DNA of 64,000 nucleotides. Source: Octopus sinensis. Taxonomy: Eukaryota. The notes beneath the pieces were generated by a model. The model searched no databases and was not told the DNA's origin. It saw nothing but the letters and a program-made list of their open reading frames with translations. The DNA lies in contig NC_043014.1 in NCBI RefSeq assembly GCF_006345805.1, positions 37,262,001 to 37,326,000 on the forward strand. The letters are read 5' to 3'. Positions 6,522-49,529 of the stretch are shown here, piece by piece; the stretch's first letter is position 1; each line of letters starts with the position of its first letter. The position numbers and the translations under genes are program-made.

Positions 6522-9500
6522 TCTCTCTCTATATAAAAGGCAGTTTGTCTGTCTGTGTGTCTGTCAGTTGTACCCTCACCTTGACCACGGCTTTCAACCG
6601 ATTCTGATGAAACTTGACACACACATAGCCCAATGTCATAATTCAAAACTGACGCAGCGAAAATTTTGAAAAGTTCCCCCAGTTCTGAAAGAAATCGATA
6701 AATTCGACATGGGGTCGAGAATCTAAGCTTTTCATATGCTACACATTTTCTGTTATAGTTTTCGCAACTTGCAATCGATTTTCACCAACCTCATGGTGAA
6801 GCTTAATGTTACCCTAAGAAACTTAATTCTGACGTTAGTTTTCCATGCAATACCTTACCATCAGAAAAAATCGATAAAATCATGCAATTTTGGGAAATCT
6901 CGTTCAAATTCAAGATGACATATTTTTGACAATATCTTTAAGAAATTGGCAGGAATTTTTTTTTTAAATTCACAGCGAGCATCATGTCTGCTCCAAGGAG
7001 CTATATGCCCCTTTTTATTCCAATAGGAAACTTTATTACTGGAAAAAATCGGTTAATTAAATCATATGTGGCACACATAGCAAACCGATTTGTGTATTAA
7101 ACACAAACCACAGACTGTCTAGGGGACGCAACTCGACCTTCTTTAACTCTTACTCCCCCAAATAACTATCAAACAGCTATCGATAATTCAACCCAACCAA
7201 TTCCTACCAGGAAGAAATTGCATTCGAGACTTTACCACAAACACTGCCACTTCAAGCAGTCAACGAGACAAAACATAACCAGACAACATAGCCTTGGCAT
7301 ACTTCCGCTAATCGCTGCTGCAGCCGCAAGTTATTTGAGTACATTTTTTGTTTAAACTTTCTTTATAACTACCACCCCAAACGTTTTTCCTTAAATTTTT
7401 GACGTACCCTAAGGGTCCTCGGATGCTACTTGCAAACTCTTGGTTTATTATAAGCCGCTTTTGTCGTGTGCACCAAAAAACCTTTTCCATTCGTTTGTTC
7501 AGTTTGGTCACTTTTCGCTTTGTCGTAGTTGTCACTCACATTGCTGCCCGCTTTTTGCCATTTTTGTACATTTTTATACATTTTGGGATACTTACTCCAC
7601 ATGTTCCTTTTTATTACACCATTGCCAAACACATTGCTATCCACCAAAATGCCACCCAAGAAGAGAAGGACCCTCCTCAGCCCTCGGACGGCCAAGGCAT
7701 CGGCTGCTAGGGCTAGAAGGGCACGCAAGACCCACGAGGAAACCGCCTTGCGCCTCTTACAAAAAGCTTCCCATTCTGCCGCTGCTCAGGCATCTGAAAC
7801 TACTAGCGACCGTTCTACCCGACTTGCAAGGGCCACAACATACAGATCTTCCCTCCGCTCGAGGTTGACGAAAGAGCAACAGTCCAGCCAAAACATGCAG
7901 GCTTCTTCCTGTGCTTCCATCCACAGAGCTCGCGAGAACCCTGAACAAAGGGCCATTTGGAATGCGGCTAACGCCGCTAGCACCGCCAGTACACGATCTG
8001 TCGAAATCTCACAGCAGAGGAGAACTCGCCAAGTTGCTGACGCCGCAAACACAGCCACGGCTCGATCTGCCGAAACACCTCAACAGAGGAGAGCTCGCCA
8101 AGCTGCTAACGCCGGAAACACAGCCATGGCTCGATCTGCCAAAACTCCAGACCACAAACTATTCGGACATCCAGAGATGCCATTAACACTGCTTCTGCTA
8201 GGGCTTCAGAGGGTGCTAAGGCGAGAGCTGAAAGGCATTCAAGGGATGCCACTGCTACCGCTGTCGCACGCGCATCTCAATCTGCTGAGGCACGGCGCAC
8301 TCGACTTGAGAGTATCAACCAATGTCGGGATATCATTTGTGGTGTACGTACCCCTGCCCCCGCTTTCTGGTCGTCACTAGTATTCAACTACGACGCCACA
8401 ATTAACTTCTCCTTGCGTGACGACATCAAGATAGGGTCAATGACAATTGTATGCCAGTTTTGCAAAGCCAAGAAATGGCCCAGAGAGCCACCTGGTTTGT
8501 GCTGCTCTGGTGGCAAAGTGTCATTGATGCTGATAAACGACCCCGCGGGGAGCACGAACGCCATTTCAATGCACCTGTGTGCAACGAAATTACCGCAGTC
8601 ATACACGGAGAGCAACACAACAGCCGTGACATAATCATCTCCTCCCGTGGTAACAGCCTGCGCAGGATCAGCAAGACTCACAGATCTTATGACGCGCTTC
8701 AGTATCCATTGCTTTTCCCTTATGGGGAAGACGGCTACCACTTCGGAATTCCTTTACGGCAGCCCTCCAATCAAACTACTGCGGCATCAAAGACGGTTTC
8801 CTGTAGGGCGTTCTACTCATACCGGTTCATGTTCAGGGAGGGTGAGTTCAACTTATTGCCCCGTTGTCGTCAGCTATTCAACCAGTTCGCCGTCGACATG
8901 GTCACCAAAATGGAATCGGAAAGGCTGCTATACATTAAACTTAGTCAGACCAAACTTCGCTCCGACTCCTACATTCATCTCCGTGACGGCTTGCAACAAG
9001 AAAATGACCCTCGCAACATCGGCAAGCCATGCATTCTACCCTCCACCTTCACGGGGAGACCGCGATATATGCGTGAAAGGATCCAAGACGCCTTGACCTA
9101 CATGCGCATTTATGACCGGTCGGACCTCTTTATCACCTACACGTGCAATCCCAACTGCGACAAAATCACTCGCAAACTCCTCCCGGGTCAGTCTCACACC
9201 CATCGACACGACATCGTTGCTAGAGTTTTCCATCTGAATTTGGGCAAAATGATGGATTTGATAGTTAAGGGTCAGATTTTCCGGCATGTCAGGTGCCACA
9301 TGCTTTCGGTCGAGTGGCAAAAGAGGGGTTTGCCACATGCTCACATCTTAATTTGGCTAACTAATAAAATAGATACTAATGACATGGACAAATTCATTTC
9401 CACCGAGATTCCTGACCCCGATGAGGACCCCGAACTGTACGAAATTGTCCGCACTACCATGGTACACGGGCCCTGTGGACCAAATTACGCCAACACACCA

Positions 9501-9683
9501 TGCTGCGAAAACAGATTAGCCTGCTCAAAGGGATTCCCTAAATGGTTCACTTTGGAGACTCAAACAGGTGGCGATGGGTATCCGCTGTACAAACGAAGGA
9601 GTCCAGCCAATGGAGGCCGCACGATTACGGTTGGGCGACATCAAGTGGACAACAGCTACATCGTCCCCTACTGTGTTAAGTGA
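6522..9683 (+). mobile_element. Helitron, 3'-truncated (Rep present, helicase absent)
   Basis: a|TCTCTCTCTATATAAAAGGCAG 5' terminus at 6522; Rep-coding frames at 7649-9683; sequence switches to a Penelope-like fragment at ~9684. Confidence 0.88.
7649..9683 (+). pseudogene. Helitron RepHel N-terminal half (Ala/Arg-rich repeats, Cys-rich CQFC..CCSGGKV motif, HUH Rep domain), frameshifted and internally deleted
   Basis: YDALQYPLLFPYGEDGY, LPSTFTG..RYM, DLFITYTCNP, DIVARVF, VEWQKRGLPHAHIL (HUH motif), MVHGPCG, YPLYKRR, VDNSYIVPY. Confidence 0.92.
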
Positions 9684-12099: not shown

Positions 12100-12160
12100 A
12101 ATAAAACTCATATTTTCGGATGCTTAGGCTGAAGCTTGCTCTGGCATCTCATCAGTTATT
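12100..12160 (-). ncRNA. Type I hammerhead ribozyme candidate (degenerate)
   Basis: AAUAA-CUGAUGA-GAUGC(20 nt)GCAUC-c-GAAA-a-uauga-GUU-UUAUU; the paralog at 36121 has GAAAC. Confidence 0.55.
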
Positions 12161-12399
12161 TAGACAAAAATGCTATGAAAAATACCATGGAATAAAGGGA
12201 GGTTACTCCAATAGCTGTGAGAAAGAAAAACTTCATTCATAGAATCTGCATATGTTACATGTATACATACACTACCACACACACGTGTATGTGTATGTAT
12301 ATGTATATATATATGTATATCTATAATATATATATTATAATAGAAATATTTAAAATTACTAAGTCTCTCTAAAAGAGATCACGGCAGCGTTCCTGGAAA

Positions 12400-12553
12400 A
12401 TAATAGTTATCGCCATACTAATATGGCATTCTTATAAAAATAAGAATAAAGCTGTCCGCTTATTAGCTCCATGAGGCCACATGGAGCTAATAAGCGGACA
12501 GCTTTATTCTTATTTTTATAAGAATGCCATATTAGTATGGCGATAACTATTAT
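12400..12553. repeat. Perfect inverted repeat, 74-bp arms with 6-nt spacer (aggcca)
   Basis: 12400-12473 is the exact reverse complement of 12480-12553. Confidence 0.95.
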
Positions 12554-12554
12554 A

Positions 12555-12631
<77 letters not shown>

Positions 12632-13197
12632 AATTCTTATGCTTTCCTAATATTAATTTTAATTCTTATGCTTTCCTAAAACTTGATTTCGAAACGTACG
12701 TCCGTGGATAACTTTAAAAATGTTTGATAGATTGCGGTAATTCATTCTCTCTTACCTGTTGTGTCAGCCTTCCAATTGCTGTTTTTACTGAGATCTCCCT
12801 TTTTAGTAGAAGAAATAGTATAACCCTTGACTGCTATTTCTAAATTCGGTATGTGGTAAGGCAATTCGTTGCTGAACCCTTATTGCTTAGTATTACTTAA
12901 ATTTTCCTCAAATGAGGCTTTTACATGCCGAAGACTACTTGGTGTAATTGATAATTATTCCAAATTAATTAATTTCACCCTTCATATTACGGATAACCAT
13001 ATTTTATCTCAGTAGATGACTACAGCATTTGTTTTGGCTACACGCGGGTGGGAAGGGGCTGTTGACACAATCGTTTCATTCACAAATTTGAATTCGGTGA
13101 TCTAGTTGAGGATTCTAGCTCGCTCTGATACTGAGTTGAGTTGGTACCTCCTAGTATCTCAAAATTCAATATATATAATCATTTATGATTATAGTAT

Positions 13198-13303
13198 TCC
13201 ACGCTGAGAGAAAAAGAAGTTTCGGTAAGATAGAATTATTTAATATTTAATATTTTAATTCTTATGCTTTCTAAAACTTGATTTCGAAACGTACGTCCGT
13301 GGA
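13198..13303 (+). ncRNA. Hammerhead ribozyme, array copy 1 (core CUGAGA, 1-nt deletion)
   Basis: TCCACG..GAAACGTACGTC CGTGGA. Confidence 0.75.
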
Positions 13304-13787
13304 TAACTTTAAAAATGTTTGATAGATTGCGGTTAATTCATTCTCTCTTACCTGTTTGGGTCAGCCTTCCAATTGCTGTTTTTACTGAGATCTCCCTTTT
13401 TAGTAGAAGAAATAGCTATAACCTTTGACTGCTATTTCTAAATTCGGTATGTGGTAGGCAATTCGTTGCTGAACCCTATTGCTTAGTATTACTTAATTTT
13501 CCTCAAATGAGGCTTTTACTGCCGAAGACTACTTGGTGTAATTGATAATTATTCCAAATTAATTAATTTCACCCTTCATTATACGGATAACCATATTTTA
13601 TCTCAGTAGATGACTACAGCATCTTGTTTTGGCTACACGCGGGTGGGAAGGGGCTGTTGACACAATCGTTTCATTCACAAATTGAATTCGGTGATACTAG
13701 TTGAGGATCTAGCTCGCTCTGATATGAGTTGAGTGGTACCTCCTAGTATCTCAAAATTCAATATATAATCATTTATGATTATAGTAT

Positions 13788-13897
13788 TCCACGCTGAAGA
13801 GAAAAGAAGTTTCGGTAGTAAGATAGAATTATTTAATATTTAATATTTTAATTCTTATGCTTTCCTAAAACTTGATTTCGAAACGTACGTCCGTGGA
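13788..13897 (+). ncRNA. Hammerhead ribozyme, array copy 2 (intact core)
   Basis: TCCACG-CTGAAGA-G...C-GAAA-CGTACG-TC-CGTGGA; 6-bp stem I. Confidence 0.9.
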
Positions 13898-14379
13898 TAA
13901 CTTTAAAAATGTTTGATAGATTGCGGTTAATTCATTCTCTCTTACCTGTTGTGTCAGCCTTCCAATTGTTTTTACTGAGATCTCCCTTTTTAGTAGAAGA
14001 AATAGCTATAACCTTTGACTGCTATTTCTAAATTCGGTATGTGGTAAGGCAATTCGTTGCTGAACCCTTATTGCTTAGTATTACTTAAATTTTCCTCAAA
14101 TGAGGCTTTTACCTGCCGAAGACTACTTGTGTAATTGATAATTATTCCAAATTAATTAATTTCACCTTCATAACGGATAACCATATTTTATCTCAGTAGA
14201 TGACTACAGCATCTTGTTTTGGCTACACGCGGGTGGGAAGGGGCTGTGACACAATCGTTCATTCACAAATTTGAATTCGGTGATACTAGTTGAGGATTCT
14301 AGCTCGCTATGATACTGAGTTGAGTTGGTACCTCCTAGTATCTCAAAATTCAATATATAATCATTTATGATTATAGTAT

Positions 14380-14484
14380 TCCACGCTGAAGAGAAAAGAA
14401 GTTTCGGTAAGATAGAATTATTTAATATAATATTTTAATTCTTATGCTTTCCTAAAACTTGATTTCGAAACGTACGTCCGTGGA
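14380..14484 (+). ncRNA. Hammerhead ribozyme, array copy 3 (intact core)
   Basis: Same motif. Confidence 0.9.
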
Positions 14485-14975
14485 TAACTTTAAAAATGTT
14501 TGATAGATTGCGGTTAATTCATTCTCTCTTACCTGTTTGTGTCAGCCTTCCAATTGCTGTTTTTACTGAGATCTCCCTTTTAGTAGAAGAAATAGCTATA
14601 ACCCTTTGACTGCTATTTCTAAATTCGGTATGTGGTAAGGCAATTCGTTGCTGAACCCTTATTGCTTAGTATTACTTAAATTTTCCTCAAATGAGGCTTT
14701 TACATGCCGAAGACTACGTGGTGTAATGATAATTATTCAAATTAATTAATTTCACCCTTCATTATTACGGATAACCATATTTTATCTCAGTAGATGACTA
14801 CAGCATCTTGTTTTGGCTACACGCGGGTGGGAAGGGGCTGTTGACACAATCGTTTCATTCACAAATTTGAATTCGGTGATACTAGTTGAGGATTCTAGCT
14901 CGCTCTGATACTGAGTTGAGTTGGTACCTCCTAGTATCTCAAAATTCAATATATAATCATTTATGATTATAGTAT

Positions 14976-15082
14976 TCCACGCTGAAGAGAAAAGAAGTTT
15001 CGGTAAGATAGAATTATTTAATATTTAATATTTTAATTCTTATGCTTTCCTAAAACTTGATTTCGAAAAGTACGTCCGTGGA
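14976..15082 (+). ncRNA. Hammerhead ribozyme, array copy 4 (GAAAA instead of GAAAC)
   Basis: Same motif with C15.2>A. Confidence 0.75.
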
Positions 15083-15567
15083 TAACTTTAAAAATGTTGA
15101 TAGATTGCGGTTAATCATTCTCTTACCTGTGTTGTGTCAGCCTTCCAATTGCTTTTTTACTGAGATCTCCCTTTTTAGTAGAAGAAATAGCTATAACCCT
15201 TGACTGCTATTTCTAAATTCGGTATGTGGTAAGGCAATTCGTTGCTGAACCCTTATTGCTTAGTATTACTTAAATTTTCCTCAAATGAGGCTTTTACATG
15301 CCGAAGACTACTTGGTGTAATTGATAATTATTCCAAATTAATTAATTTCACCCTTCATTATTACGGATAACCATATTTTATCTCAGTAGATGACTACAGC
15401 ATCGGTTTGGCTACACGCGGGTGGGAAGGGGCTGTTGACACAATCGTTTCTTCACAAATTGAATTCGGTGATACTAGTTGAGGATTCTAGCTCGCTCTGA
15501 TACTGAGTTGAGTTGGTACCTCCTAGTATCTCAAAATTCAATATATAATCATTTATGATTATAGTAT

Positions 15568-15672
15568 TCCACGCTGAAGAGAAAAGAAGTTTCGGTAAGA
15601 TAGATTATTTAATATTTAATATTTTAATTCTTATGCTTCCTAAAACTTGATTTCGAAACGTACGTCCGTGGA
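15568..15672 (+). ncRNA. Hammerhead ribozyme, array copy 5 (intact core)
   Basis: Same motif. Confidence 0.9.
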
Positions 15673-16161
15673 TAACTTTAAAAATGTTTGATAGATTGCG
15701 GTTAATTCATTCTCTCTTACCTGTTTGTGTCAGCCTTCCAATTGCTGTTTTACTGAGATCTCCCTTTTTAGTAGAAGAAATAGCTATAACCCTTTGACTG
15801 CTATTTCTAATTCGGTATGTGGTAAGGCAATCGTTGCTGAACCCTTATTGCTTAGTATTACTTAAATTTTCCTCAAATGAGGCTTTTACATGCCGAAAAG
15901 ACTACTTGGTGTAATTGATAATTATTCAAATTAATTAATTTCACCCTTCATTATTACGGATAACCATATTTTATCTCAGTAGATGACTACAGCATCTTGT
16001 TTTGGCTACACGCGGGTGGGAAGGGGCTGTTGACACAATCGTTTCATTCACAAATTTGAATTCGGTGATACTAGTTGAGGATTCTAGCTCGCTCTGATAC
16101 TGAGTGAGTTGGTACCTCCTAGTATCTCAAAATTCATATATAATCATTATGATTATAGTAT

Positions 16162-16269
16162 TCCACGATGAAGAGAAAAGAAGTTTCGGTAAGATAGAAT
16201 TATTTTTAATATTTATATTTTAATTCTTATGCTTTCCTAAAACTTGATTTCGAAACGTACGTCCGTGGA
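16162..16269 (+). ncRNA. Hammerhead ribozyme, array copy 6 (core AUGAAGA, C3>A)
   Basis: Same motif with one core substitution. Confidence 0.75.
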
Positions 16270-16763
16270 TAACTTTAAAAATGTTTGATAGATTGCGGTC
16301 AATTCATTCTCTCTTACCTGTTGTGTCAGCCTTCCAATTGCTGTTTTTACTGAGATCTCCCTTTTTAGTAGAAGTAGAATAATAGCTATAACCCTTTGAC
16401 TGCTATTTCTAAATTCGGTATGTGGTAAGGCAATTCGTTGCTGAACCCTTATTGCTTAGTATTACTTAAATTTTCCTCAAATGAGGCTTTTACATGCCGA
16501 AGACTACTTGGTGTAATTGATAATTATTCCAAATTAATTAATTTCACCCTTCATTATTACGGAATAACCATATTTTATCTCAGTAGATGACTACAGCATC
16601 TTTGGCTACACGCGGGTGGGAAGGGGCTGTTGACACAATCGTTTCATTCACAATTTGAATCGGTGATACTAGTTGAGGATTCTAGCTCGCTCTGATACTG
16701 AGTTGAGTTGGTACCTCCTAGGTATCTCAAAATTCAATATATAATCATTTATGATTATAGTAT

Positions 16764-16870
16764 TCCACGCTGAAGAGAAAAGAAGTTTCGGTAAGATAGA
16801 ATTATTTAATATTTAATATTTTAATTCTTATGCTTTCCTAAAACTTGATTTCGAAACGTACGTCCGTGGA
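16764..16870 (+). ncRNA. Hammerhead ribozyme, array copy 7 (intact core)
   Basis: Same motif; stem II insert 16777-16852 (76 nt). Confidence 0.9.
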
Positions 16871-17359
16871 TAACTTTAAAAATGTTTGATAGATTGCGGT
16901 TAATTCATTCTCTCTTACCTGTTGTGTCAGCCTTCCAATTGCTGGTTTTACTGAGATCTCCCTTTTTAGTAGAAGAAATAGCTAAACCTTTGACTGCTGC
17001 TATTCTAAATTCGGTATGTGGTAAGGCAATTCGTTGCTGAACCCTTATTGCTTAGTATTACTTAAATTTTCCTCAAATGAGGCTTTTACATGCCGAAGAC
17101 TACTTTGTGTAATTGATAATTATTCCAAATTAATTAATTTCACCCTTCATTATTACGGATAACATATTTTATCTCAGTAGATGACTACAGCATCTTGTTG
17201 GCTACACGCGGGTGGGAAGGGGCTGTTGACACAATCGTTTCATTCACAAATTGAATTCGGTGATACTAGTTGAGGATTCTAGCTCGCTCTGATACTGAGT
17301 TGAGTTGGTACCTCCTAGGATCTCCAAAATTCAATATATAATCATTATGATTATAGTAT

Positions 17360-17462
17360 TCCACGCTGAAGAGAAAAGAAGTTTCGGTAAGATAGAATTA
17401 TTAATATTAATATTTTAATCTTATGCTTCCTAAAACTTGATTTCGAAACGTACGTCCGTGGA
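17360..17462 (+). ncRNA. Hammerhead ribozyme, array copy 8 (intact core)
   Basis: Same motif. Confidence 0.9.
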
Positions 17463-17957
17463 TAACTTTAAAAATGTTTGATAGATTGCGGTTAATTCAT
17501 TCTCTCTTACCTGTTTGTGTCAGCCTTCCAATTGCGTTTTTACTGAGATCTCCCTTTTTAGTAGAAGAAATAGCTATAACCCTTGACTGCTATTTCTAAA
17601 TTCGTATGTGGTAAGGCAATTCGTTGCTGAACCCTTATGCTTAGTATTACTTAAATTTTCCTCAAATGAGGCTTTTACATGCCGAAGACTACGTGGTGTA
17701 ATTGATAATTATTCCAAATTAATTAATTTCACCCTTCATTATTACGGATAACCATATTTTATCTCAGTAGATGACTACAGCATCTTGTTTTGGCTACACG
17801 GGGTGGGAAGGGGCTGTTGACACAATCGTTTCATTCACAAATTTGAATTCGGTGATACTAGTTGAGGATTCTAGCTCGCTCTGCTTCTGAGTACTGAGTT
17901 GAGTTGGTACCTCTAGTATCTCAAAATTCAATATATAATCATTTATGATTATAGTAT

Positions 17958-18063
17958 TCCACGCTGAGAGAAAAGAAGTTTCGGTAAGATAGAATTATTT
18001 AATATTTAATATTTTAATTCTTATGCTTTCCTAAAACTTGATTTCGAAACGTACGTCCGTGGA
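17958..18063 (+). ncRNA. Hammerhead ribozyme, array copy 9 (core CUGAGA, 1-nt deletion)
   Basis: Same motif. Confidence 0.75.
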
Positions 18064-18246
18064 TAACTTTAAAAATGTTGCGAGATTGCGGTTAATTATT
18101 CTCTCTTACCTGTTTGTGTCAGCCTTCCAATTGCTGTTTTTACTGAGATCTCCCTTTTAGTAGAAGAAATAGCTATAACCCTTTGACTGCTATTTCTAAA
18201 TTCGGTATGTGGTAAGGCAATTCGTTGCTGAACCCTTATTGCTTAG

Positions 18247-18283
<37 letters not shown>

Positions 18284-20009
18284 CATACTCACACATGTGT
18301 ACACACACACACATATATATATATACATATGTAAACATACACACATATATGTGCCGAAGCACACATCCTTATGTTCATGTACACATCTCTATACACACAT
18401 GCACATACATATGCAGATACACAAGACGGTGCATATAAATACATATACATACGTAGTCAACATCATCCTCGCATATATATATAGACGTTTATACAAATAA
18501 AACACATACACAAAACATAAACCATAAACACATTCACATTTGCCGTAAAAACTTGAATATTCCCATGAGTTATGGATGTATATGGGTGCATATATATATA
18601 TAGTATATATATATAATATATATATATATACACAAATATACCCTCCTGTCTGTCAAACACACCTACACTTGCAGATACAGAAGCATATATACGTACATAC
18701 ATGTATGAAGGAAGGAGACAAGTACAACAGATACAGTTTTACACTTGTATATATACATACATTCGTACACATGTACACATGCACACACATACACATCTGG
18801 TACATGCTTATATATACAAATACTACACGCATATACAGTCACACAATTATAAAAGGTGGGGAAAATAATATACAGAAAATATATGTAAAGAAAATAAAAG
18901 AAATGTTAAGACATATGAAAGGCTTGTATGTGGACGTTATATAAAAAGCATGTTCTATCTGTATATATATTTTCCCCTGATTCAGGTCTAATGACCCTCC
19001 ATATTTGTTTTAATTCGCTTTCTACTATATGTCTCCATTGTCCTGTTTTTGTCTCCTACCTTTGACTCTCCATAAATTCTAAATTTGATTATGTTATTAA
19101 TGGGAGCAACAGTCTTTGAAGACTCATATTGTCATTGATTGCTCGAACACTCATTTGTTTTTGTATTTCATGTTGTTTACTGTTGGTGACATCCTGTACC
19201 CATGTATGCATATATATATATATATCTTATTTATATTATTATAACATATATATATGTATAGGCCATATGTGTATCAGCCAGTGTCACTACACAATGTTTA
19301 TACAATAAATATGCTGAGTAAAATGTACATGTGTATTAATATGTTATTAATAATTAATTATAGTAACAATAATAACTAGCAGGTCCCGTGAATATTTCAC
19401 AGAATCAACAGTTAACTTAATGTCTTATTTCTGAAAGCTTTATCCAAAAAATCTGAAAGCATAGCCTGTGTTGTGTCTATATTAAAAGATAATCACTTGT
19501 CTGCTAATCATTGAAAAGTGAAGGAAATTGGAATACGATGATTACTTAATGCACTTTATACATACACTTCTATATATTCATGCCCAATCTTATAGATGTG
19601 ATACACAGCACTTGCCCTCTTTCTCTCTCACTCTTTGCCTTACCCTCTTTTACGGACTCCTTTTTCTTTCACGCCTTGCCTTTCCCTTCAACTAATCACG
19701 TGAAAGTATCACAGACAAGTTAAGTAACAGAAAGAACTTACTTCAAAGATAAAATATTACACATTTCACTCCCCTCCCATCACTATCCACTCCATCCCCA
19801 TCACCATCTCCCTCCTTCAACTAATCGTGTATAAACATTATGGACAGGTTAAATAAGGGAGAAACAAGCAGAGTTATTATAAGATAATAGTAAATAAATT
19901 ACCAGGAAAAATGTGAGCACGAAAAGTCATATTCTGAAGATAATAAACCTGGAAAAGTACAGGACAAGTTATTACACCTGGAAAAGTATAGAACAAGCTA
20001 CCTACCATA

Positions 20010-26221: not shown

Positions 26222-29200
26222 ATCATCATCATCATCATCATCGTTTAACATCCGTTTTCTGTGCTAGCACGGCTTGGACGGTTCGACCATGGTCTGGGAA
26301 GCAAGGAGGCTGCACCAGGCTCATCTGGCAATGTTTCTACAGCTGGATGCCCTTCCTAACGCCAACCACTCCGTGAGTATAGTGGGTGCTTTTTACGTTT
26401 CACCGGCCCAGGTGCCAGACGAGTCTGGTAGCGGCCACGATCGGTTGGTGCTTTTAACGTGCCACCAGCACGGTTGCCAGTCAAGGTGGTGCTGGCATTG
26501 GCCACATTCGGACGGCACTTTTTACGTGCCACCGGCACAGAAGCCAGTCAAGGCGGCGCTGGCATCGGCCACGTTCGGATGGTGCTTTTTACGTGCCACC
26601 GGCACAGAAGCCAGTCAAGGCGGCACTGGCATCGGCCACGTTTGGATGGTGCTTTTTATGTGTCACCAGCACAGGTATCACAACTACTATTTCCATTGAT
26701 ATTTATTTCGATGTCATGTACTTGACTCAATAGGTCTCCTCCAGCACAGCGGGTTGTTCTGAAATCCAAGGTACTTTGAATGGGCTGGGACTATGCGGAG
26801 CTGGTGCAGGAAGCAGCCCGGGTCTTTGCAGTCACAGCATATCTCCAGAGATCTCGGTCCTTCGTCATTGCCTCTGAGGCCCAACGCTCTGAGGTCATGC
26901 TTCAATACCTCATCCCATGTCTTCCTGGGTCTACCTCTACCCCTGATACCTTTAACTGTTTGGGAGTGACACTTCTTCACACATCTCTCCTCATCCATCC
27001 ACAGTACTTGACCATACCATCGCAAGCGTCGCTCTTGCACACCACATCTGATGCTTCTTATGTCCAGCATCTCTCTCAGGGTGCTTACACTCTGTCATGC
27101 GTGCACACTGACATTACACATCCAGCGGATCATGATAGCTTCATTTCTTTCAAGTCTACGCATGTCCTCAGCAGTCACAGCCCATGTTTCACTACCGTGA
27201 AGCATGGCAGTTCGCACACATGCATCATACAATCTACCTTTCACTCTGAGCGAGAGACCCTTTGTTGCCAGTAGGGGTAGGAGCTTTCTAAACTTTGCCC
27301 AGGCTATTCATATTCTAGTGGTGACACTCTCTGAGCATCCACCTCCACAACTATCTTGGTCACCTAGGTAGCGGAAACTATCAACTACTTCTAGTTTCTC
27401 CCCCTGGAGTGTGATGGAATCTGTTTTCTGAGTATCTGTGGTGTCTATTGTCCCGGTGCATCTGCCGCACATGAAAGCTATCTTATCAGTTACTTTCCCT
27501 TTGATGTTGCTGCACCTCTTATGCGTCCATAGCTTACAGTGGGTACATCTTATGGAGTTTCTACCTACACCTTTCCTACAGATCAAGCAGGGCCACCTGC
27601 TCGAGGGGACGTGTGCTGAGTTCGCCTTTCTGCTTACTATAACTTTGGTCTTTGCTACATTTACTCTAAGGCCCTTTGATTCTAAACCTTGCTTCCACAC
27701 CCGAAATTTCTTTTCTAGTTCCGGTAGTGATTCTGCTATGAGAGCCAGCTCATCAGCATAGAGGAGCTCCCAGGGGCAACCTGTTTTGAATTCCTCTGTT
27801 ATTGCCTGGAGGACTATGATGAATAAAAGGGGACTGAGGGCTGAACCTTGGTGTACACCTACTTCTACCCGGAATTCTTCACTATATTCATTGCCAATCC
27901 TAACCTTGCTGACAGCCCCTCTGTATAGGGCCTGTACAGCCCTTATTAGCCATTCGTCAATCTCCAGTTTCCATATCGACCACCAGATAAGGGATCGGGG
28001 GACCCTGTCAAAGGCTTTCTCCAAGTCCACAAAAGCTATGTAGAGGGGTTTATCTTTAGCTAGGTATTTCTCCTAGCTATGTCGGACCAGGAATATAGCA
28101 TCAGTGGTGCTTCTGCCTGGCACAAAATCGAACTGCATCTCATCTAAGCAAATTCTCTCCCTAATGAGATGGATTATGACCCTCTCTGTGACCTTCATCA
28201 CCTGATACAACAGTTTAATACCCCTGTAGTTATTTCTATCTAGAGCATCACCTTTACCCTTCTAGCAGTTGACTATGGTGCTGCTACTCCAGTCATTGGG
28301 TATGACTCCATTGTGAACTACCTGGTTTACAATGCGGGTGACTAGGCCATAGCCCACACAACCAGTTGTTTTAAGCATCTCAGCAGTGATTCCTGATGGG
28401 CCAGGGACTTTTCCTGGTTTCATACTCTTAATTGCCTTAACTACAAGGGAGCTGTCTATTCGGATAGCTGGTCCCTCTACCGGGTCAACATTTGGCAGGC
28501 TCTCCTCCTCCCATTCATTCTCCACATTCAGCTGTCTTTCATAATGGCTTCTCCAAGCCTCTTTCTTTTCACAATCATTAAAAGCAAGTGCACCATCATC
28601 CATACGGACACATTTCTCTCCTGTAACATCACTATTTTCTCTCACACACTGTCTAGCAATCCGAAATACCTCGGTTCTTTGGTCCTCACATTGCTGGACA
28701 TTGGCAAACTTCTTTTCTGCTACATCTTTGGCTATGTATACCTGCCGCCCAGCCTCCCTTTTGGTACAGTTCCCTGCTACCCCCATCCCTCCAGGCTCTC
28801 CAGGCCTGTTTCTTTGCTCTAATGGCTTTGTCTACTGTACTATTCCACCACCATGTAACTTTAGGTCTGGAAGGGACTTTGCACCATCCACAGACTTGGT
28901 CTGTGGCACTCAGCAAGCTGTCCCGTAGGAATTTCCAGCTACCTTCTATGTCCGATGTCTGTAGCTCCTCATCCCTCACATCAAATTTCTTGATGAGGAT
29001 GTCCCTAAATCTCTGACCATGTGAAGGGTTCTTTAGCTTCCAAATCCTTCCTTTCTGGATTGGTCTGTTTCTTGGTATCCTTCTGGTCTCAAGCCTAAAG
29101 TCACTAATGATTAGCCTATGATGAGGAGTACATTCTTCACCCGGGAGGGTCTTTGTATTTAAGAGCAACCCTGCATCCCGCTGTCTGGTGAGGATGAAGT

Positions 29201-29809: not shown

Positions 29810-29823
29810 TGTATATATATATA

Positions 29824-29856
<33 letters not shown>

Positions 29857-32939: not shown

Positions 32940-34740
32940 AAAAAATTTTCCAATCTTCTGTGTTGTGAGGACTGGAAACTTGTGTTTCAAATTGTAAGAC
33001 AGTGTGTGAGAGAAAATTGTGATGTCATTCGAGAGAAATGTGTCCACATGGACGATGGCTCACTTGCATTGAATGATGCTGCAAAAGAGAGACTGGGAGA
33101 TGCCACTATGAAATGAAGAGAATGAGTGGAGAAAGAGAGTCTGCGAAATGTTGACCCAACATAGGGACCAGCTATTCGTATTCACAGTATGTTGGTAAAT
33201 AAAGCAATTAAGGGTACGAAAATGGGGAAAGCCCCCAGCCCATCAGGAATCACTCCTGAGATGCTTAAAATATCTGGTGGCATAGGCTACAGTCTAGTCA
33301 TCAATATAGCCAACCAGGTGATACACAAAGGAATCACACCAATGACTGCTGTAGCAGCAACCTAGTCAACTGTTACAAAGGTAAAGATGACACATTAGAT
33401 AGAAATAATCACAGAGTTATCAGATGATGAAATGCATGGAGAGGGTCACAGCCCAACTAATTAAGGAGAGAGTTAGTTTAGATGAATGCAGTTTGGGTTT
33501 GTGCCAGGGAGAAGCAGCACTGATGCTATATTTCTGGTAAGATAGTTGCAGGAGAAATTCTGAGCTAAAGATAAACCTCTGTACATGTCTTTTGTTGAAA
33601 TGGAGAAAGCCTTTGACAGGGTCCTCCAATCTCTTATCTGGTGGTCACTGCGGAAACTAGGGATAGGCGATTGATTGGTAAGAGCTGTATAATTCAAGCA
33701 CAGGGATGCTGTCAGTAAGGTGAAAGTTGTCAATGAGTATAGTAAAGAATTCTGGGTAGAAGTAGGGGTTCACCAAGGATCAGTCCTAAACCCCATCTTA
33801 TTCATCATAGTCCTCCAGGCAATAATAGAGGAATTCAAGACAGGCTGCCCTGCCTCTATGCTGATTATCTTGCTCTAAACTCTGAGTCACTACCAGAACT
33901 AAAGAAGACGTTTCAAGTGTGGAAGCAAGGTCTAGAATCAAAAGGATCTAGCAAAAACCAATGTCTAAGTAAGTAGGAAGGCAAACAAATCACAAATCCC
34001 TTCAGGTAGATGGCCCTGCTGTAGAAAAGGTATAGGTAGAAACGCCATAAGATATATCAGGTATAAGCTATGGACACATGTAAGCTGCAGCAATATCAAA
34101 GGAGGTTAAATGGGAAGATAGTTTTTGTGTGTGGAAGATGCACAGGTGCAATAAACACCGAAGAAGTACAGAAAACTCCTTCATATGCAAGGAGAAAAAC
34201 TAGAAGTAGTTGATAGCTTCCATTACCTAGGTGACCAAGTCAGAAGCAGGGATGGATACTCTGAGAGTGTAGCTGCTAGAATAAGAATAGCCTGACCAAA
34301 GTTCAGTGAGTTCCTACATCTGCTGGTAACAAAGGGCCTCTTCCTCAGAGTGGAATTTAGATTGTATAATGCCTGTGCACAAACAGCCATGCTACATAGC
34401 AGTCAAACATGAGCTGAGACTACTGCAGACATGCATAGGCTTGAAAGAAATGAAGCTACTATGCTCCACTGGATATGTAATGTGAGTGTGCATACACAAC
34501 CAAGTGCAAGCACCCTGAGAGAAAGGTTGGACTTAAGAAGCATCAAACGTAGTGTGCAAGAGAGATGGCTGCACTGGTATAGTCATGTGCTGCATATGAA
34601 TGAGGATAGCTTTGTGACATGTCACACCCTAACCTGTGGAAGATGTAGACCGAGCAAGACATGGCATGAGCTGGTGAAGCATGACCATCGAATGTTGGGC
34701 CTCACGGAGGTAATGACAAGTGACTAAGACCTTTGGAGAA
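32940..34740 (+). mobile_element. Heavily decayed RTE LINE
   Basis: Homologous to 26222-29809 in opposite orientation; many stops. Confidence 0.85.
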
Positions 34741-34930
34741 TGAGGCTTTGCATTCATCCCGCTTCCACCCACGTGAGTTATAGAGTAAAAAAATTCCTAC
34801 AGAGAGAACTGTAGTTGAAAAACAGGGATAGAGAATTATATTATCAATAATAAAAGGGTAAAATCAATTAATTATTAATTAATTTTACCAAGTAGTGTTC
34901 AGTATGTAAGAGGACCATTTAAGGTATATT
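34737..34930 (-). mobile_element. Fragment of a diverged relative of the 595-bp array unit
   Basis: Reverse complement aligns to the unit (ccttaaatgg..ctacttggt..ttaattgattttacccttttattatt..actacag..cacgtgggtggaagcggg); inverted copy at 35141-35256. Confidence 0.7.
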
Positions 34931-35081
34931 TAAAACATTCCCTCTCTCTCTTTCGGAGAGGCACTGAGCAGCTATACGCACACATACACACACGGCAGTA
35001 ACTTCCACCTACCGAATTCAATCACAAAGCTTCGGTTGGCTCGGGGCTATAGTAGAAGACACCTACCCAAAGTGCCACAAA

Positions 35082-35550
35082 ACATTACGTTATATAATTA
35101 GGGTTCAGTAAAATAATTTACTTCACCACACACTGAACTCTTATTATTGATAATATAATTCTCTCTCCCTGTTTTTCAACTACAGTTCTCTCTATAGGAA
35201 TTTGTTTACTCTATAACTCACGTGGGTGGAAGCGGGATGAATGCAAAGCCTCATTCGTACTTTAGTGCTCTCAAATCCAAATCTAAGAAATCTTTGAGCT
35301 GACGAAGGAAATGTTGATCTTTAAATTCAACTAATCTAGAAACGTACGTTCTTAAGTAATATTAATGTACATGTGATCTTTTGTTATTTTTCCCTCCATA
35401 CCTGCGTGAATTATTTTTGAGTATACATTGTCTGGGAGATTGTTCTTATAGTAGAAGAAATAGCTAAGATTTTTTGGCTGCTATTTCTAAAAGTTCAGTG
35501 TGTGGTAAAGTAAATTATTTTACTGAACCCTAATTATATAACATAACGTA

Positions 35551-35554
<4 letters not shown>
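35082..35554 (+). mobile_element. Diverged retrozyme-like element with an inverted copy of its 3' end at its 5' end
   Basis: 35082-35140 is the reverse complement of ~35492-35554; contains a hammerhead and blocks shared with the array unit. Confidence 0.75.
35294..35355 (+). ncRNA. Type I hammerhead ribozyme
   Basis: UUGAG-CUGACGA-(stem II with GUUGA/UCAAC)-GAAA-CGUACG-UU-CUUAA; same palindromic stem III as the array. Confidence 0.72.
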
Positions 35555-35649
<95 letters not shown>

Positions 35650-35708
35650 GAGAGAGAGTGATAGAGAGATAGCTAGAGATATACACACATATATATATAT
35701 ATACTCCA

Positions 35709-36100: not shown

Positions 36101-36120
36101 TGAGTAAATGAATATATAGA

Positions 36121-36168
36121 GTTTCGGATGCCGGGGTTGAAGCATGCTCTGGCATATCATCAGTTATT
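36121..36168 (-). ncRNA. Truncated hammerhead, paralog of 12100-12160
   Basis: AAUAA-CUGAUGA-uAUGCC...GGCAUcc-GAAAC; 3' arm lost at the SINE junction. Confidence 0.45.
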
Positions 36169-38680
36169 AAGACAAAAACGCTATGTGAAAAAAAAAAATG
36201 ATGAATAAAGGGAAGTTACTCCAATAGGCATAGTGAAAGTAAAACTTCGTTCATTGAATCTGCATATGTACACCTATATACATACACATACGCACACACA
36301 TACACACCTATATGTGCCCATGCACGCATCATTATGTTCATGTACACATCTCTATATGCACATGCACATACATATGCAGATACACAAAACCACACATGTA
36401 TACATATGTACAAATATACACACATACGTATAAATGCGTAGTCAAAATCATCCTCGCATATATATATAGACGTTTATACAAATAAAAACACATACACAAA
36501 ACATAAACCATAAACACATTCACATTCGCCACAAAATCTTGAATATACCTATGAGTTATGTATGTATAGGGCTATGTATATAGATATGTACACAAATACA
36601 CCCTCCTGTCTGTCAAACACACCTACACCTGCAGATATACAAGCATATATACATACATATTTGTATGAAAGGAGACAAGTACAACAGCAGGTCCCGTGAA
36701 TATTTCACAGAATCAATAGTTGACTTAATGGCTTATTTCTGAAAGCTTTATCCCAAAACTCTGAATGTATATACACCTTGTAAGGGTAATTTAACCCAAT
36801 ATTTCTGCATTTGAAAAAATATCTTATTTGTATCATAGAATACATATTTTCGGTGCTTCTAACAAAAGAACTAATATTTCTTTACATTTATATGCACATG
36901 GTTGTTCCATACAGCTAAAGTGTTTAGCATCTAAATTCAGTGGTGAATTCATTAGCAGGCAGTTTAGCTTCATGGTAAAACAATCAGTTGGAGTCTTTGA
37001 GGGATGTGGGTTTGAGTCCCATGGCTGGTTGTTGACAATTTTTTCTGTGTTGTGAGGGTAATTTACACAGTATTTCTGTTGTTCTAACAGCAATTCTGCA
37101 TTTGAAAAAATATTATCTTCTTATTTGCATAACACACACACACACATATATGTATATATGGCTAGGTATTGCCAAGGAATGAGTAGAGGACAATAAAACA
37201 TTCGGACAGATAGACGATACAAAGAGGCAGATGAGAGAAACAACAATTAGAAAGACAGGCAAAAAAGATGGGTCATTCGTGGCCTTCTTTCTTCAGTCAA
37301 GTACCAGAAGTCACAACGATTTCGGGCAGTTACACTTGAGATGGTTTGATCTGGTTGCCCCCAAAAATGTCTAAGCTAAGAGCATTAGACCCCTTTGTAA
37401 AAAAGCTAGCAAACATGTACAGCAACAAAAGACGGAGAATATGGTTCACAAAAAGACAAAAAACGGAAAACATGGTACACAATTACGAATACAAACAGCA
37501 AGAAAATAACAACAGGTGTCTTTCAACTGAGAACAAATCCAAATGAGCTGGCATGTATGAAGTGAAAGCCTAAAGGCAGGAACATAGGAGATGGACATAA
37601 GGGGTGTTGGTGGTCAGCAATCAGACCAAAAAGGAAAGATTGTGGCTGGCTGAACACCAGTCACAGGTGCCAGTAAGGCAATGCTGGTAACAATTGCACT
37701 GGAAGGCAGTGGGATTGAAGAATTAGAAAAAAAAAGAGAAAGGTACAGGGGAGATAAATGAGTGGGAAATAGTGGGAGTTAAAGAAAGAGAGGGCCAAGA
37801 AATATGAGAAAGAGGAGGAGCAAGTAAAAAAAAATAATAAAAGGGGGACTAATAGACAGAGTAAGAGTCGTACAAAATTTAGATACATACATATTTTAAG
37901 GTGAGCACAAGTATGTACGTATGCCAGACTAAACTCTTTTTCCTTTCCCTTTTGTCTGCTTTTTCCAATACAACCTACTTGCACCGTCCCCTCTGTTACT
38001 CTACCCGCTACCATCTTCTCATAACGACAAATCTCTTCCTCACATCATACTTCAATTTCTCTCCCTATTCCACATGAAGTCATTACTCTCCCTTTGTTTA
38101 ACTCTCCCTTACAAAATAACCACCCTTGTGGTAGTGCCACACAAAAGTACTGAGTGCATTCTGTACAGAGAAGGTCCATGGCCAAGTGGTGAGTGTGTTA
38201 CACACACAATTGTAAGATTGTGGTTTCATTTTCCAAACCATGCATATGTTGCATTCTTGAGCAAAACACTTCATTTCATGCTGCTCCACACCACTTAGCT
38301 CCAGCTATAGTTGGTAAGTTAACCATGCAACAGACCAGCATCCCATACAGGGATGAACTGTGTTGTGATGTTAGACACCTATATGCCAAAGAAACTGGGT
38401 TAAGATCTGACCTTAGAAATTCAAGGTTCTTAACAGACCTATGTTCTGTATAGTTGTCAAATGAAGCAGTGAGAATGCAGGGTTAAGCAGGTTCACTTGC
38501 CTTGTCAAGGGTACAGCAACCTTTACAGTGATGGTACCTGGAAACAATGTGCTCATTAAAGTGTTTTATGTTAGGAGGTATGAGTTTCTCAGAGCTGTTC
38601 CAGTCAGTCAACCCATTCAATGCATGCCAGCAGAGAAAGTAGACATATGAGGATGATGATGATAATATATATTGACTCAC

Positions 38681-49429: not shown

Positions 49430-49529
49430 NNNNNNNNNNNNNNNNNNNNNNNNNNNNNNNNNNNNNNNNNNNNNNNNNNNNNNNNNNNNNNNNNNNNNNN
49501 NNNNNNNNNNNNNNNNNNNNNNNNNNNNN
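49430..49529. other. Assembly gap (100 N)
   Basis: Run of n. Confidence 1.

What the first reader, a model, noticed from the sequence alone, without database searches (positions are those of the whole stretch)
12626..18250. Tandem array of ~595-nt hammerhead-ribozyme units: a cephalopod retrozyme / circular-RNA retroelement
Seen: nine complete head-to-tail monomers (595, 594, 587, 598, 590, 597, 601, 592 and 601 nt, cleavage site to cleavage site) plus partial ends, with no ORF. Each junction folds as a type I hammerhead: stem I UCCACG/CGUGGA, core CUGAAGA, stem II closed by G-C, GAAA, stem III C-GUAC-G and a GUC cleavage triplet. Five of the nine cores are perfect. Established: non-LTR retrozymes are non-coding tandem repeats with one minimal type I hammerhead per unit; their transcripts self-cleave to monomers that circularise, and they are thought to be copied by Penelope-like RTs. 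The animal examples I know (cnidarian, bivalve, amphibian) have shorter units of a few hundred nt. Inference: this is a young retrozyme family, plausibly still active. I am not aware of a ~600-nt octopus family being described, but I cannot verify novelty.
Basis: partly seen in the sequence, partly recalled or inferred. Interest (0 to 1): 0.93.

Follow-up and report, generated by a model that had tools for sequence, protein, structure and literature searches.

The report
Octopus hammerhead-ribozyme tandem repeat (retrozyme)
A 5.6-kb block of about 9.4 near-identical, non-coding 599-bp repeats, each carrying a self-cutting hammerhead RNA motif, sits inside a TA microsatellite of an octopus-like genome; it looks like a new, probably young member of the known "retrozyme" class of circular-RNA retroelements, not a new kind of element.

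Summary
There are nine complete head-to-tail units of 595, 594, 587, 598, 590, 597, 601, 592 and 601 nt, plus partial ends, at 12626-18250. No frame is open for more than 80 codons. Each junction carries a type I hammerhead, and five of the nine cores are perfect.

The motif is not chance: a strict descriptor hit 0 of 200 shuffled windows.

New evidence:
- A paralogous segment at 36.1-36.8 kb is an "empty site", so the array was inserted into a CA/TA microsatellite.
- An older, decayed relative (34738-35555) ends at the same unit position, next to (TA)n.
- The circular monomer is predicted to be unusually structured (z = -6.7).
- Helix III is 1 bp plus a palindromic loop, so cleavage is expected only in multimers.

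All sequence-testable hallmarks of metazoan non-LTR retrozymes are met. Transcription, cleavage, circles and the Penelope-like mobiliser are untested. The 599-nt size is within the known range (51-972 bp). Verdict: a new member of a known kind, of moderate interest.

The parts
12558..12626 (.). (AT)n microsatellite abutting the left end of the array (target-site microsatellite)
   Evidence: TRF, 34.5 copies; sequence
12626..12702 (+). 5' partial unit. It starts inside the helix II arm (consensus position ~545), carries a 29-nt local duplication (12620-12679), and has only the 3' half of a hammerhead (GAAACGUACGUC).
12703..18057 (+). Nine complete monomers, cleavage site to cleavage site: 12703-13297, 13298-13891, 13892-14478, 14479-15076, 15077-15666, 15667-16263, 16264-16864, 16865-17456, 17457-18057. 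The consensus is 599 nt.
13788..13897 (+). Representative intact type I hammerhead spanning a unit junction: UCCACG / CUGAAGA / G-[75-76-nt helix II arm]-C / GAAA / C-GUAC-G / UC|CGUGGA. The other intact copies are 14380-14484, 15568-15672, 16764-16870 and 17360-17462. The defective copies are 13198-13303, 14976-15082, 16162-16269 and 17958-18063.
   Evidence: Rfam Hammerhead_1 matches the full model at 21.3 bits, E=0.0042. The MFE fold reproduces helices I and II.
13636..13653 (+). GC-rich box CACGCGGGUGGGAAGGGG, in eight of the nine complete units (one unit has a 1-nt deletion) and conserved in relative B. In the predicted fold it is one strand of a long-range helix. Its function is unknown.
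   Evidence: 10 matches in the window against 0.05 expected; fold
18058..18250 (+). 3' partial unit, ending at consensus position ~200 (…GCTTAGTATTA)
18250..18287 (.). (TA)n microsatellite abutting the right end of the array
   Evidence: TRF; sequence
36122..36771 (+). Paralogous 'empty site'. It is contiguous with the homologues of the array's left flank (12114-12283) and right flank (18309-18730, 19378-19463), joined through a CA/TA microsatellite.
   Evidence: blastn 79-92%; the joined flanks align at 86%
34738..35555 (+). Relative 'B', an older decayed copy of a related family. It has an inverted partial copy (34738-35143, interrupted by a SINE fragment at 34936-35075) placed head-to-head with a direct copy (35138-35555). 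The direct copy contains a degenerate hammerhead (core CUGACGA from 35298, through GAAACGUACGUU|CUUAAG, cut after 35350). It ends at unit position ~200, next to (TA)n 35556-35645.
   Evidence: nhmmer E=3e-10 and 1e-9; inverted repeats; sequence; A/B alignment 61% identical

Best explanation
This is a non-autonomous, non-coding retroelement of the non-LTR retrozyme class, lying in an octopod genome.

Proposed life cycle:
1. The array is transcribed into multimeric plus-strand RNA.
2. Helix III of each hammerhead is a single C-G pair closed by the palindromic loop GUAC. One motif therefore cannot fold productively alone. Two motifs in the same multimer pair their ACGUACGU palindromes into an 8-bp shared helix III (a double hammerhead), and each cuts after GUC.
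3. [quoted passage not shown]
4. A host RtcB-type tRNA ligase circularises the monomers. The circle keeps helices I and II but cannot re-form helix III, so it is stable.
5. A reverse transcriptase from an autonomous element, most likely a Penelope-like element whose GIY-YIG endonuclease prefers (TA)n, copies the circle round and round. The multimeric cDNA is inserted into a TA microsatellite. Here that gave about 9.4 units.

Shown here: the anatomy, the non-chance hammerhead, the energetic preference for the dimer, the strong predicted structure, the insertion relative to an empty paralogue, the (TA)n flanks, and a dispersed relative with the same 3' end.

Inferred from the literature: transcription, cleavage, ligation, rolling-circle reverse transcription, and the identity of the mobiliser.
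For: Array anatomy and hammerhead cores.

The motif is not chance: 0 of 200 shuffles.

Of 4227 Rfam families, the best hit to one junction is Hammerhead_1. It covers the full model at E=0.0042, and its only penalty is a 75-nt insertion in the helix II loop.

The MFE of the 119-nt junction forms helix I and the helix II arm.

The ACGUACGU self-duplex has -11.2 kcal/mol. A trimmed hammerhead dimer folds as a double hammerhead at -39.4 kcal/mol, against 2 x -13.5 for two monomers.

The circular monomer has an MFE of -161.3 kcal/mol against -118.7 +/- 6.3 for shuffles (z = -6.7). The minus strand gives z = -3.5. Relative B gives plus -4.7 and minus -3.4.

The array is non-coding, has 34% GC and lacks PBS and PPT.

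An empty paralogous site exists. (TA)n lies on both flanks.

Relative B ends at the same unit position next to (TA)n and has a head-to-head inverted partial copy. Between A and B, helix I changes from UCCACG/CGUGGA to UUUGAG/CUUAAG: three double (compensatory) changes, two one-sided changes and no broken pair. The core differs only at the free position N7 (read).

Variants between units are almost all singletons (109 against 14 shared). That is expected if all units were copied from one template.

Literature:
- Canonical metazoan type I hammerheads have helix I of 6 bp, helix II of 4 bp and helix III of 1-2 bp with a palindromic loop, and they act as dimers (PMC4209133).
- Retrozymes give circular RNAs, and RtcB circularises them (PMC7229834).
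- Penelope-like elements prefer (TA)n and often carry an inverted 5'-truncated copy (PMC8557442).
- O. vulgaris has 31 young families of Penelope-like elements (PMC13282606).
Against: There is no RNA evidence of any kind.

The Rfam score is below the curated cut-off (21.3 against 34). There was no hit at all in the whole-window or 7-kb scans.

A 76-nt helix II arm replaces the loop 2 that normally contacts loop 1, so fast cleavage at physiological Mg2+ is not assured.

Four of the nine cores are damaged as assembled.

The global fold gets no covariation support from relative B: 27 changed pairs kept against 59 broken, no better than slid controls.

No Penelope-like ORF lies in the window, and no pseudo-LTR homology could be tested.

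No further copies were found in 20 kb of O. vulgaris or in the metagenome, viral or prokaryote collections, so family size and distribution are unknown.

The empty site could in principle be a microsatellite-mediated deletion.

The singleton-dominated variation may be assembly error, and so carry no information about origin.
Confidence: 0.75

Rival explanations
1. An inert hammerhead-bearing satellite. A single retrozyme or pseudo-LTR-derived unit landed here once. It was then amplified in place by unequal exchange or replication slippage. Today it is neither transcribed nor circularised, so the hammerhead is a fossil.
For: Four of nine cores are damaged as assembled. The global fold has no covariation support. 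No other copy of family A lies in the window or in L003. Relative B is clearly decayed and gets no Rfam hit. Multimer arrays of retrozymes are known to behave like satellites.
Against: The units are 97-99% identical, with almost no shared variants and no higher-order pattern, whereas the flanking paralogues differ by 14-21%. The array is therefore far younger than its surroundings. Five cores are perfect in all conserved positions. The plus-strand structure signal is strong (z = -6.7). In-place amplification usually leaves neighbour-shared variants.
Confidence: 0.2
2. Not a separate element, but the tandemly arranged pseudo-LTRs or a 5'-truncated remnant of an autonomous Penelope-like element.
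For: Pseudo-LTRs of Penelope-like elements carry type I hammerheads with enlarged helix II. These elements insert as partial tandems, often with inverted copies, and prefer (TA)n. Relative B shows a head-to-head inverted copy.
Against: There is no RT or GIY-YIG coding sequence in or next to the array. Nine identical 599-nt units lie with nothing between them. The only RT ORFs in the window are LINE-type, with APE-like endonuclease.
Confidence: 0.04
3. A chance hammerhead-like motif in an ordinary tandem repeat, or an assembly artefact.
For: The Rfam score is below threshold. The error-like indels show the region was hard to assemble.
Against: No shuffle reached the strict descriptor. Every conserved core position is correct. 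The same GAAACGUACGU box and layout recur in two other repeat families of the window. Helix I covaries between A and B. The flanks are anchored by a paralogue.
Confidence: 0.01

Closest known systems
Metazoan non-LTR retrozymes (Cervera & de la Pena 2020, PMC7229834; coral, mussel, axolotl)
   Same: Head-to-tail non-coding repeats with one type I hammerhead per unit. Low GC. No LTR, PBS or PPT. Highly self-paired predicted circle. Arrays range from dimers to large multimers.
   Different: The unit is 599 nt, against the ~150-450 nt first described, though within the 51-972 bp reported in 2026. Helix II carries a 76-nt arm in place of a short loop 2. The host is a cephalopod, which I found described nowhere in the searchable literature. 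RNA circles are not shown.
Newt/axolotl satellite 2 hammerhead (HHR_Amex1 type)
   Same: Helix III is a single base pair capped by a palindromic tetraloop. Cleavage is expected through a double hammerhead formed by two tandem copies.
   Different: Amphibian units are ~330-350 bp. They keep the conserved loop 1-loop 2 tertiary contacts and a 4-bp helix II with a small loop. Here, internal loops (2x2 after 4 bp of helix II; 2x2 after 6 bp of helix I) sit where those loops would be. Whether they interact is unknown.
[quoted passage not shown] 2021, PMC8557442)
   Same: Type I motif with a larger than usual helix II and a palindromic helix III region, and a dimeric mode. The elements insert preferentially into (TA)n, and inverted 5'-truncated copies lie beside direct ones, as in relative B.
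   Different: There is no RT-endonuclease ORF. This hammerhead keeps a canonical helix III pair and loop and a 6-bp helix I, and it has no bulged base between A9 and G10.1. Homology to any pseudo-LTR was not testable.
Plant LTR retrozymes (PMC4918200)
   Same: Similar circle size (600-1000 nt). Non-coding, hammerhead-processed, with a branched, stable predicted structure.
   Different: The plant elements use type III hammerheads in LTRs, have PBS and PPT, more than 55% GC, are mobilised by Ty3/Gypsy elements and have a dimeric LTR layout. None of these applies here.
Schistosoma Sm-alpha / cave-cricket pDo500 hammerhead satellites
   Same: Tandem or SINE-like repeats in invertebrates that encode type I hammerheads.
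   Different: Their hammerheads are compact and efficient as monomers, with loop-loop contacts. Their units are shorter.

Membership tests
Hammerhead ribozyme, type I (Rfam RF00163) | Conserved core: C3 U4 G5 A6 N7 G8 A9, G12 A13 A14, the A15.1-U16.1 pair, and H17 not G | tested here: met
   CUGAAGA ... GAAA-C-GUAC-G-U-C in five of nine complete copies. The other four differ by one change each.
Hammerhead ribozyme, type I (Rfam RF00163) | Three helices around the core in type I order (helix I open, helices II and III closed), with a G10.1-C11.1 pair | tested here: met
   The MFE of the 119-nt junction forms the 6-bp helix I and the helix II arm that starts with G-C. The Rfam alignment covers model positions 1-45. 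Helix III is only 1 bp, but an 8-bp helix forms in the dimer.
Hammerhead ribozyme, type I (Rfam RF00163) | Score at or above Rfam's gathering cut-off (34 bits) | tested here: not met
   No hit at gathering score or at E<=10 in 7 kb. A 161-nt search gave 21.3 bits, E=0.0042. The shortfall comes from a 75-nt insertion where the model expects 10.
Hammerhead ribozyme, type I (Rfam RF00163) | Covariation that preserves the helices among relatives | tested here: inconclusive
   The array units are too alike to test this. Between A and relative B, helix I keeps all six pairs through three double and two one-sided changes. However, B has lost G10.1-C11.1, and only two families are available.
Hammerhead ribozyme, type I (Rfam RF00163) | Mg2+-dependent self-cleavage 3' of H17 | not testable with these tools
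   Needs in vitro transcription of dimeric constructs.
Metazoan non-LTR retrozyme | Head-to-tail tandem repeats (dimers to large multimers), each with one type I hammerhead | tested here: met
   About 9.4 units and nine complete hammerheads.
Metazoan non-LTR retrozyme | No protein-coding capacity | tested here: met
   The longest open frame is 80 codons in the consensus trimer. Real ORFs are at most 55 aa and are not conserved. No protein homologue was found.
Metazoan non-LTR retrozyme | Low GC (<45-50%) and no LTR, PBS or PPT | tested here: met
   GC is 34%. There is no terminal repeat other than the unit itself. No plus-strand PBS match was found, and the longest purine run is 14 nt, within the hammerhead.
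Metazoan non-LTR retrozyme | Unit size within the family's range | tested here: met
   599 nt is above the 150-450 bp of the 2020 description but inside the 51-972 bp found across 2026 families.
Metazoan non-LTR retrozyme | Signs of mobility: dispersed copies and filled versus empty sites | tested here: met
   An empty paralogous site at 36.1-36.8 kb and a diverged relative at 34.7-35.6 kb. Only one window was sampled.
Metazoan non-LTR retrozyme | Expression as linear and circular monomeric RNAs | not testable with these tools
   No transcriptome search was available. The only related result is that the predicted circle is highly structured (z = -6.7).
Metazoan non-LTR retrozyme | Co-occurrence with, or derivation from, Penelope-like elements | not testable with these tools
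   No Penelope-like ORF lies in the window. The literature reports 31 young families of these elements in O. vulgaris. Pseudo-LTR homology could not be searched.
Penelope-like element (autonomous) | RT plus GIY-YIG endonuclease ORF flanked by hammerhead-bearing pseudo-LTRs | tested here: not met
   No ORF lies between the hammerheads. The spacing is 599 nt, not ~3 kb.
Plant-type LTR retrozyme | Type III hammerheads in LTRs, a tRNA-Met PBS and a PPT | tested here: not met
   The topology is type I. There is no plus-strand PBS or PPT.

The most novel reading that the evidence does not exclude
This is a currently active, cephalopod-specific retrozyme family whose ~600-nt circular RNA is abundant in octopus tissues. 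Its insertions have a defined 3' end (unit position ~200) joined to (TA)n. If so, the family would give the first sequence-level handle on how the reverse transcriptase and endonuclease of a Penelope-like element recognise and prime a retrozyme template. The long helix II arm would then be a functional module, such as a protein-binding or priming site, rather than a neutral insertion.
Probability: 0.2. Interest if true: 0.7.

Novelty: new member of a known kind. Interest (0 to 1): 0.5.

Why it matters
Retrozymes are the main known route by which animal genomes make abundant ribozyme-processed circular RNAs. How they are copied back into DNA is still unsettled.

This locus extends the class to cephalopods. 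The retrozyme papers I could search examine corals, mussels, insects and vertebrates, and a 2026 O. vulgaris repeat annotation mentions neither hammerheads nor retrozymes.

It also offers an unusually clean natural experiment. A young multi-unit insertion lies beside its own empty paralogue, in a TA microsatellite, and shares a 3' end with an older relative. That fits target-primed insertion by an enzyme that prefers (TA)n.

There is a practical warning too. Hammerheads with large helix II insertions escape Rfam-based annotation, so such elements are probably under-counted.

Tried and rejected
1. Rfam at gathering score on the whole window and at E<=10 on 12-19 kb gave no hammerhead. Only a 161-nt search recovered Hammerhead_1, below threshold.

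2. I looked for outside relatives and found none.
   - I translated the longest open frame of the unit, hoping that gene callers had called it in octopus assemblies. There was no hit.
   - Exact-pattern scans of the metagenome (x2), viral (x2) and prokaryote genome collections found only two chance 19-mers in bacteria.
   - One 20.9-kb O. vulgaris locus reached through a LINE protein holds no copy.

3. Species-level identification through the Helitron ORF and an ankyrin exon failed: they are not on record or have no homologue.

4. Covariation of the whole-unit fold, using relative B, was no better than slid-partner controls. I therefore make no claim about specific long-range helices.

5. A lax-descriptor hit at 30458-30514 is not conserved in its own paralogue at ~22.2 kb and does not fold as a hammerhead. 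I rejected it as chance.

6. The GAAACGTACGTA boxes at 53145 and 56969 (family C) have a degenerate core (CCGAUGA), and their MFE is not a hammerhead. They are remnants at best.

7. I considered a LINE partner, because B and C abut LINE ORF fragments. The intact LINE copy has a different 3' UTR, so I found no shared-tail relationship.

8. A 10-of-12 match to the plant tRNA-iMet PBS lies on the minus strand. It is in the wrong orientation and from the wrong kingdom, and about 0.05 such matches are expected by chance.

9. ARAGORN found no tRNA-like part.

Full report
**1. The observation**

The motif GAAAC-NNNN-GTH followed by CGTGGA occurs at ten evenly spaced plus-strand sites between 12691 and 18063. 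Cutting after GTC gives nine monomers of 595, 594, 587, 598, 590, 597, 601, 592 and 601 nt, plus a 77-nt 5' piece and a 193-nt 3' piece.

The repeat finder independently gives repeat families with spacings of 587-604 nt. TRF did not list the array only because its longest period is 500. It did show an (AT)n run at 12558-12626, a (TA)n run at 18250-18287, and a 29-nt duplication at the left edge.

The array is 5625 bp, about 9.4 units, with 34% GC. The majority consensus is 599 nt. The longest stop-free frame in a trimer of the consensus is 80 codons. Real ORFs are at most 55 aa and differ from unit to unit. The longest frame has no protein homologue.

**2. The hammerhead**

Each junction reads 5'-UCCACG CUGAAGA G[..]C GAAA C GUAC G UC|CGUGGA-3'. 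All conserved core positions are correct, the G10.1-C11.1 pair is present, and the site is GUC.

There are nine complete motifs:
- Five are perfect.
- Two lack one A of CUGAAGA.
- One has C3>A.
- One has C15.2>A.

This explains why Rfam reports nothing at gathering score or at E<=10 on 7 kb.

When only 161 nt are searched, the best of all 4227 families is Hammerhead_1. It aligns over the full model (positions 1-45) at 21.3 bits, E=0.0042, with 75 nt inserted where the model has 10. That is below the curated 34 bits, and I report it as such.

The MFE of the 119-nt junction forms helix I and the helix II arm. A strict descriptor finds the five intact copies in the window and nothing in 200 dinucleotide shuffles. 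A lax descriptor averages 0.02 hits per shuffled window. The motif is therefore real, although the array counts as one independent occurrence.

**3. How cleavage would work**

Helix III is one C-G pair closed by GUAC, and the stretch ACGUACGU is an 8-nt palindrome. Alone it barely folds (-0.8 kcal/mol). Two copies form an 8-bp duplex of -11.2 kcal/mol. Two trimmed hammerheads co-fold as a double hammerhead at -39.4 kcal/mol, against -27.0 for two separate monomers.

This is the architecture described for most metazoan type I hammerheads: helix I of 6 bp, helix II of 4 bp, and helix III of 1-2 bp with a small palindromic loop, active as dimers in tandem transcripts (PMC4209133; amphibian HHR_Amex1, PMC7229834).

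Here the internal loops lie after 6 bp of helix I and after 4 bp of helix II, where loops 1 and 2 normally touch. Whether they interact is unknown.

**4. The unit as an RNA**

Folded as a circle, the plus-strand consensus has an MFE of -161.3 kcal/mol, against -118.7 +/- 6.3 for shuffles (z = -6.7). It is 64% paired, with helices I and II formed. The minus strand gives z = -3.5.

A 497-nt composite of relative B gives z = -4.7 on the plus strand and -3.4 on the minus strand. So the sequence is strongly self-complementary, more so in the hammerhead sense, as reported for retrozyme circles.

I could not support any particular long-range helix. When A's MFE pairs are mapped onto B, 27 changed pairs are kept and 59 are broken, no better than slid controls.

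**5. Evidence that it was inserted**

The left flank (12114-12283) and the right flank (18309-18730, 19378-19463) are both homologous to one contiguous stretch at 36122-36771, at 79-92% identity. The joined flanks align to that stretch at 86% identity, with the junction inside a CA/TA microsatellite.

Relative to this paralogue, the array locus has gained three things: a 156-nt palindromic element (12399-12554), the (AT)n/(TA)n runs, and the array itself.

The flanks differ by 14-21%. The units differ from their consensus by 1-2%. The array is therefore much younger than the duplication. A precise deletion in the paralogue is possible but less simple.

**6. Relatives in the window**

A profile of the unit finds one diverged relative, B, at 34738-35555 (E=3e-10 and 1e-9). 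It is 61% identical overall and 75-78% in the best blocks.
- B consists of an inverted partial copy lying head-to-head with a direct copy. The arms are 97% and 91% complementary.
- Its direct copy carries CUGACGA ... GAAACGUACGUU|CUUAAG.
- Compared with A, helix I keeps all six pairs through three double and two one-sided changes. The core differs only at the free position N7.
- G10.1-C11.1 is lost, and Rfam sees nothing. B is decayed.
- B's direct copy ends at about unit position 200, next to (TA)n 35556-35645. The main array also ends at about position 200, next to (TA)n.
- A GC-rich box, CACGYGGGTGGRAAGSGG, is shared by A and B: 10 matches in the window against 0.05 expected.

A third family, C (53145 and 56969, minus strand), keeps GAAACGUACGUA but has a degenerate core and does not fold as a hammerhead.

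**7. The mobiliser**

The window holds LINE-type RTs with APE-like endonucleases and a Helitron fragment, but no Penelope-like ORF. The link to Penelope-like elements therefore rests on the literature:
- Their pseudo-LTRs carry type I hammerheads with enlarged helix II.
- They insert preferentially into (TA)n, often with an inverted 5'-truncated copy (PMC8557442).
- Vertebrate retrozymes are sister to pseudo-LTRs of Penelope-like elements.
- O. vulgaris has 31 young families of Penelope-like elements (PMC13282606).

The (TA)n flanks and B's inverted copy fit this picture but do not prove it.

**8. Variation between units**

Of the variant columns, 36 substitutions and 73 indel columns are singletons, and only 14 are shared. 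Of 84 indel events, 59 lie beside an identical base. Gap-free 300-nt repeats elsewhere in the window differ by substitutions.

This indel-rich, singleton-rich spectrum looks like long-read consensus error in a tandem repeat. The true units may be nearly identical, and the two CUGA-GA cores may be artefacts. If the variants are real, the star-like pattern fits copying of all units from one template better than stepwise unequal exchange.

**9. Host**

The LINE RT ORF has its best named hits in Octopus vulgaris (70%) and O. bimaculoides (63%). A 20.9-kb O. vulgaris locus shares the window's SINE and LINE families at 75-91% nucleotide identity. An octopod origin is supported. The species was not determined.

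**10. Novelty**

Non-LTR retrozymes are established in cnidarians, molluscs (mussel), insects, fishes, amphibians and reptiles. Their units range from 51 to 972 bp, and three quarters of families have at most seven units per array.

Full-text searches for hammerhead or retrozyme together with octopus or cephalopod returned no description of such an element.

The element is therefore a new member of a known kind. Its particular features are the long helix II arm, the escape from Rfam, and an informative empty site. I score interest at 0.5: solid, and useful for the mechanism question, but not surprising to a specialist.

Noticed in passing
window 34738-35555: Decayed relative (B) of the array unit. 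It is an inverted partial copy lying head-to-head with a direct copy that has a degenerate hammerhead. It ends at the same unit position (~200) as the main array, next to (TA)n 35556-35645, and it abuts a truncated LINE ORF end (34200-34742).
   Followed up: yes
window 12114-12283 + 18309-19463 versus 36122-36771: A paralogous pair of segments, 79-92% identical. The second is contiguous where the first holds the array, so it serves as an empty site. It is unclear whether these are a segmental duplication or two copies of an unrecognised repeat.
   Followed up: partly
window 53145-53156 and 56969-56980 (minus strand): A third hammerhead-like family: CCGAUGAG ... 77-nt arm ... GAAACGUACGUA|UGCAUUG. 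It lies directly downstream of LINE ORF fragments truncated at the same codon, within a ~3.8-kb tandem segmental duplication (51-59 kb). The core is degenerate (U4>C), and the MFE is not a hammerhead.
   Followed up: partly
window 12399-12554; related copy 59446-59587: A near-perfect 156-nt palindrome (78-bp arms, MITE- or foldback-like) lies between the left flank and the (AT)n that borders the array. It is absent from the empty paralogue. It produced weak sub-threshold mir-965 hits on both strands.
   Followed up: partly
window 34936-35075 and 35703-36118: An octopus-type SINE (85% identical to a copy in the O. vulgaris locus L003) lies downstream of B's (TA)n. A 5'-truncated copy is inserted in B's inverted arm at unit position ~200, the same point where both arrays end. 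This suggests a fragile or preferred site in the unit.
   Followed up: no
window 12703-18057: Differences between units are dominated by singleton 1-nt indels beside identical bases (73 singleton indel columns against 36 singleton substitutions). This looks like long-read assembly error, so unit lengths and 'broken' cores may be unreliable.
   Followed up: partly
window 13041-17222 (eight units) and 34758-34775, 35219-35236: The GC-rich box CACGYGGGTGGRAAGSGG is conserved between families A and B even though they are only ~61% identical overall. It is predicted to pair with the 5' region of the unit. It could be a promoter or protein-binding element, but this was not tested.
   Followed up: partly
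window 26230-29906 (minus strand); also 1362-3716 and 8451-9683: A LINE with APE-like endonuclease, RT and a PHD finger. Its 3' UTR holds 3.7 copies of a 67-nt repeat and ends in a (GAT)n tail. The best named relative is from O. vulgaris. There is also a second LINE (RT plus endonuclease fragments) and a Helitron_like_N ORF.
   Followed up: partly
window 30458-30514: This stretch matches a lax hammerhead descriptor (expected 0.02 per window). The CUGAAGA is not conserved in its paralogue near 22.2 kb, and the fold is not a hammerhead. It is probably chance.
   Followed up: yes
window 49430-49529: A run of 100 N (scaffold gap) lies inside the duplicated 49-59 kb region.
   Followed up: no
array consensus ~428-439 (e.g. 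window 13129-13140), minus strand: CAGTATCAGAGC matches, in 10 of 12 positions, the tRNA-iMet primer-binding site recalled for plant retrozymes. It is antisense to the hammerhead, and about 0.05 such matches are expected by chance. I judge it coincidental.
   Followed up: yes
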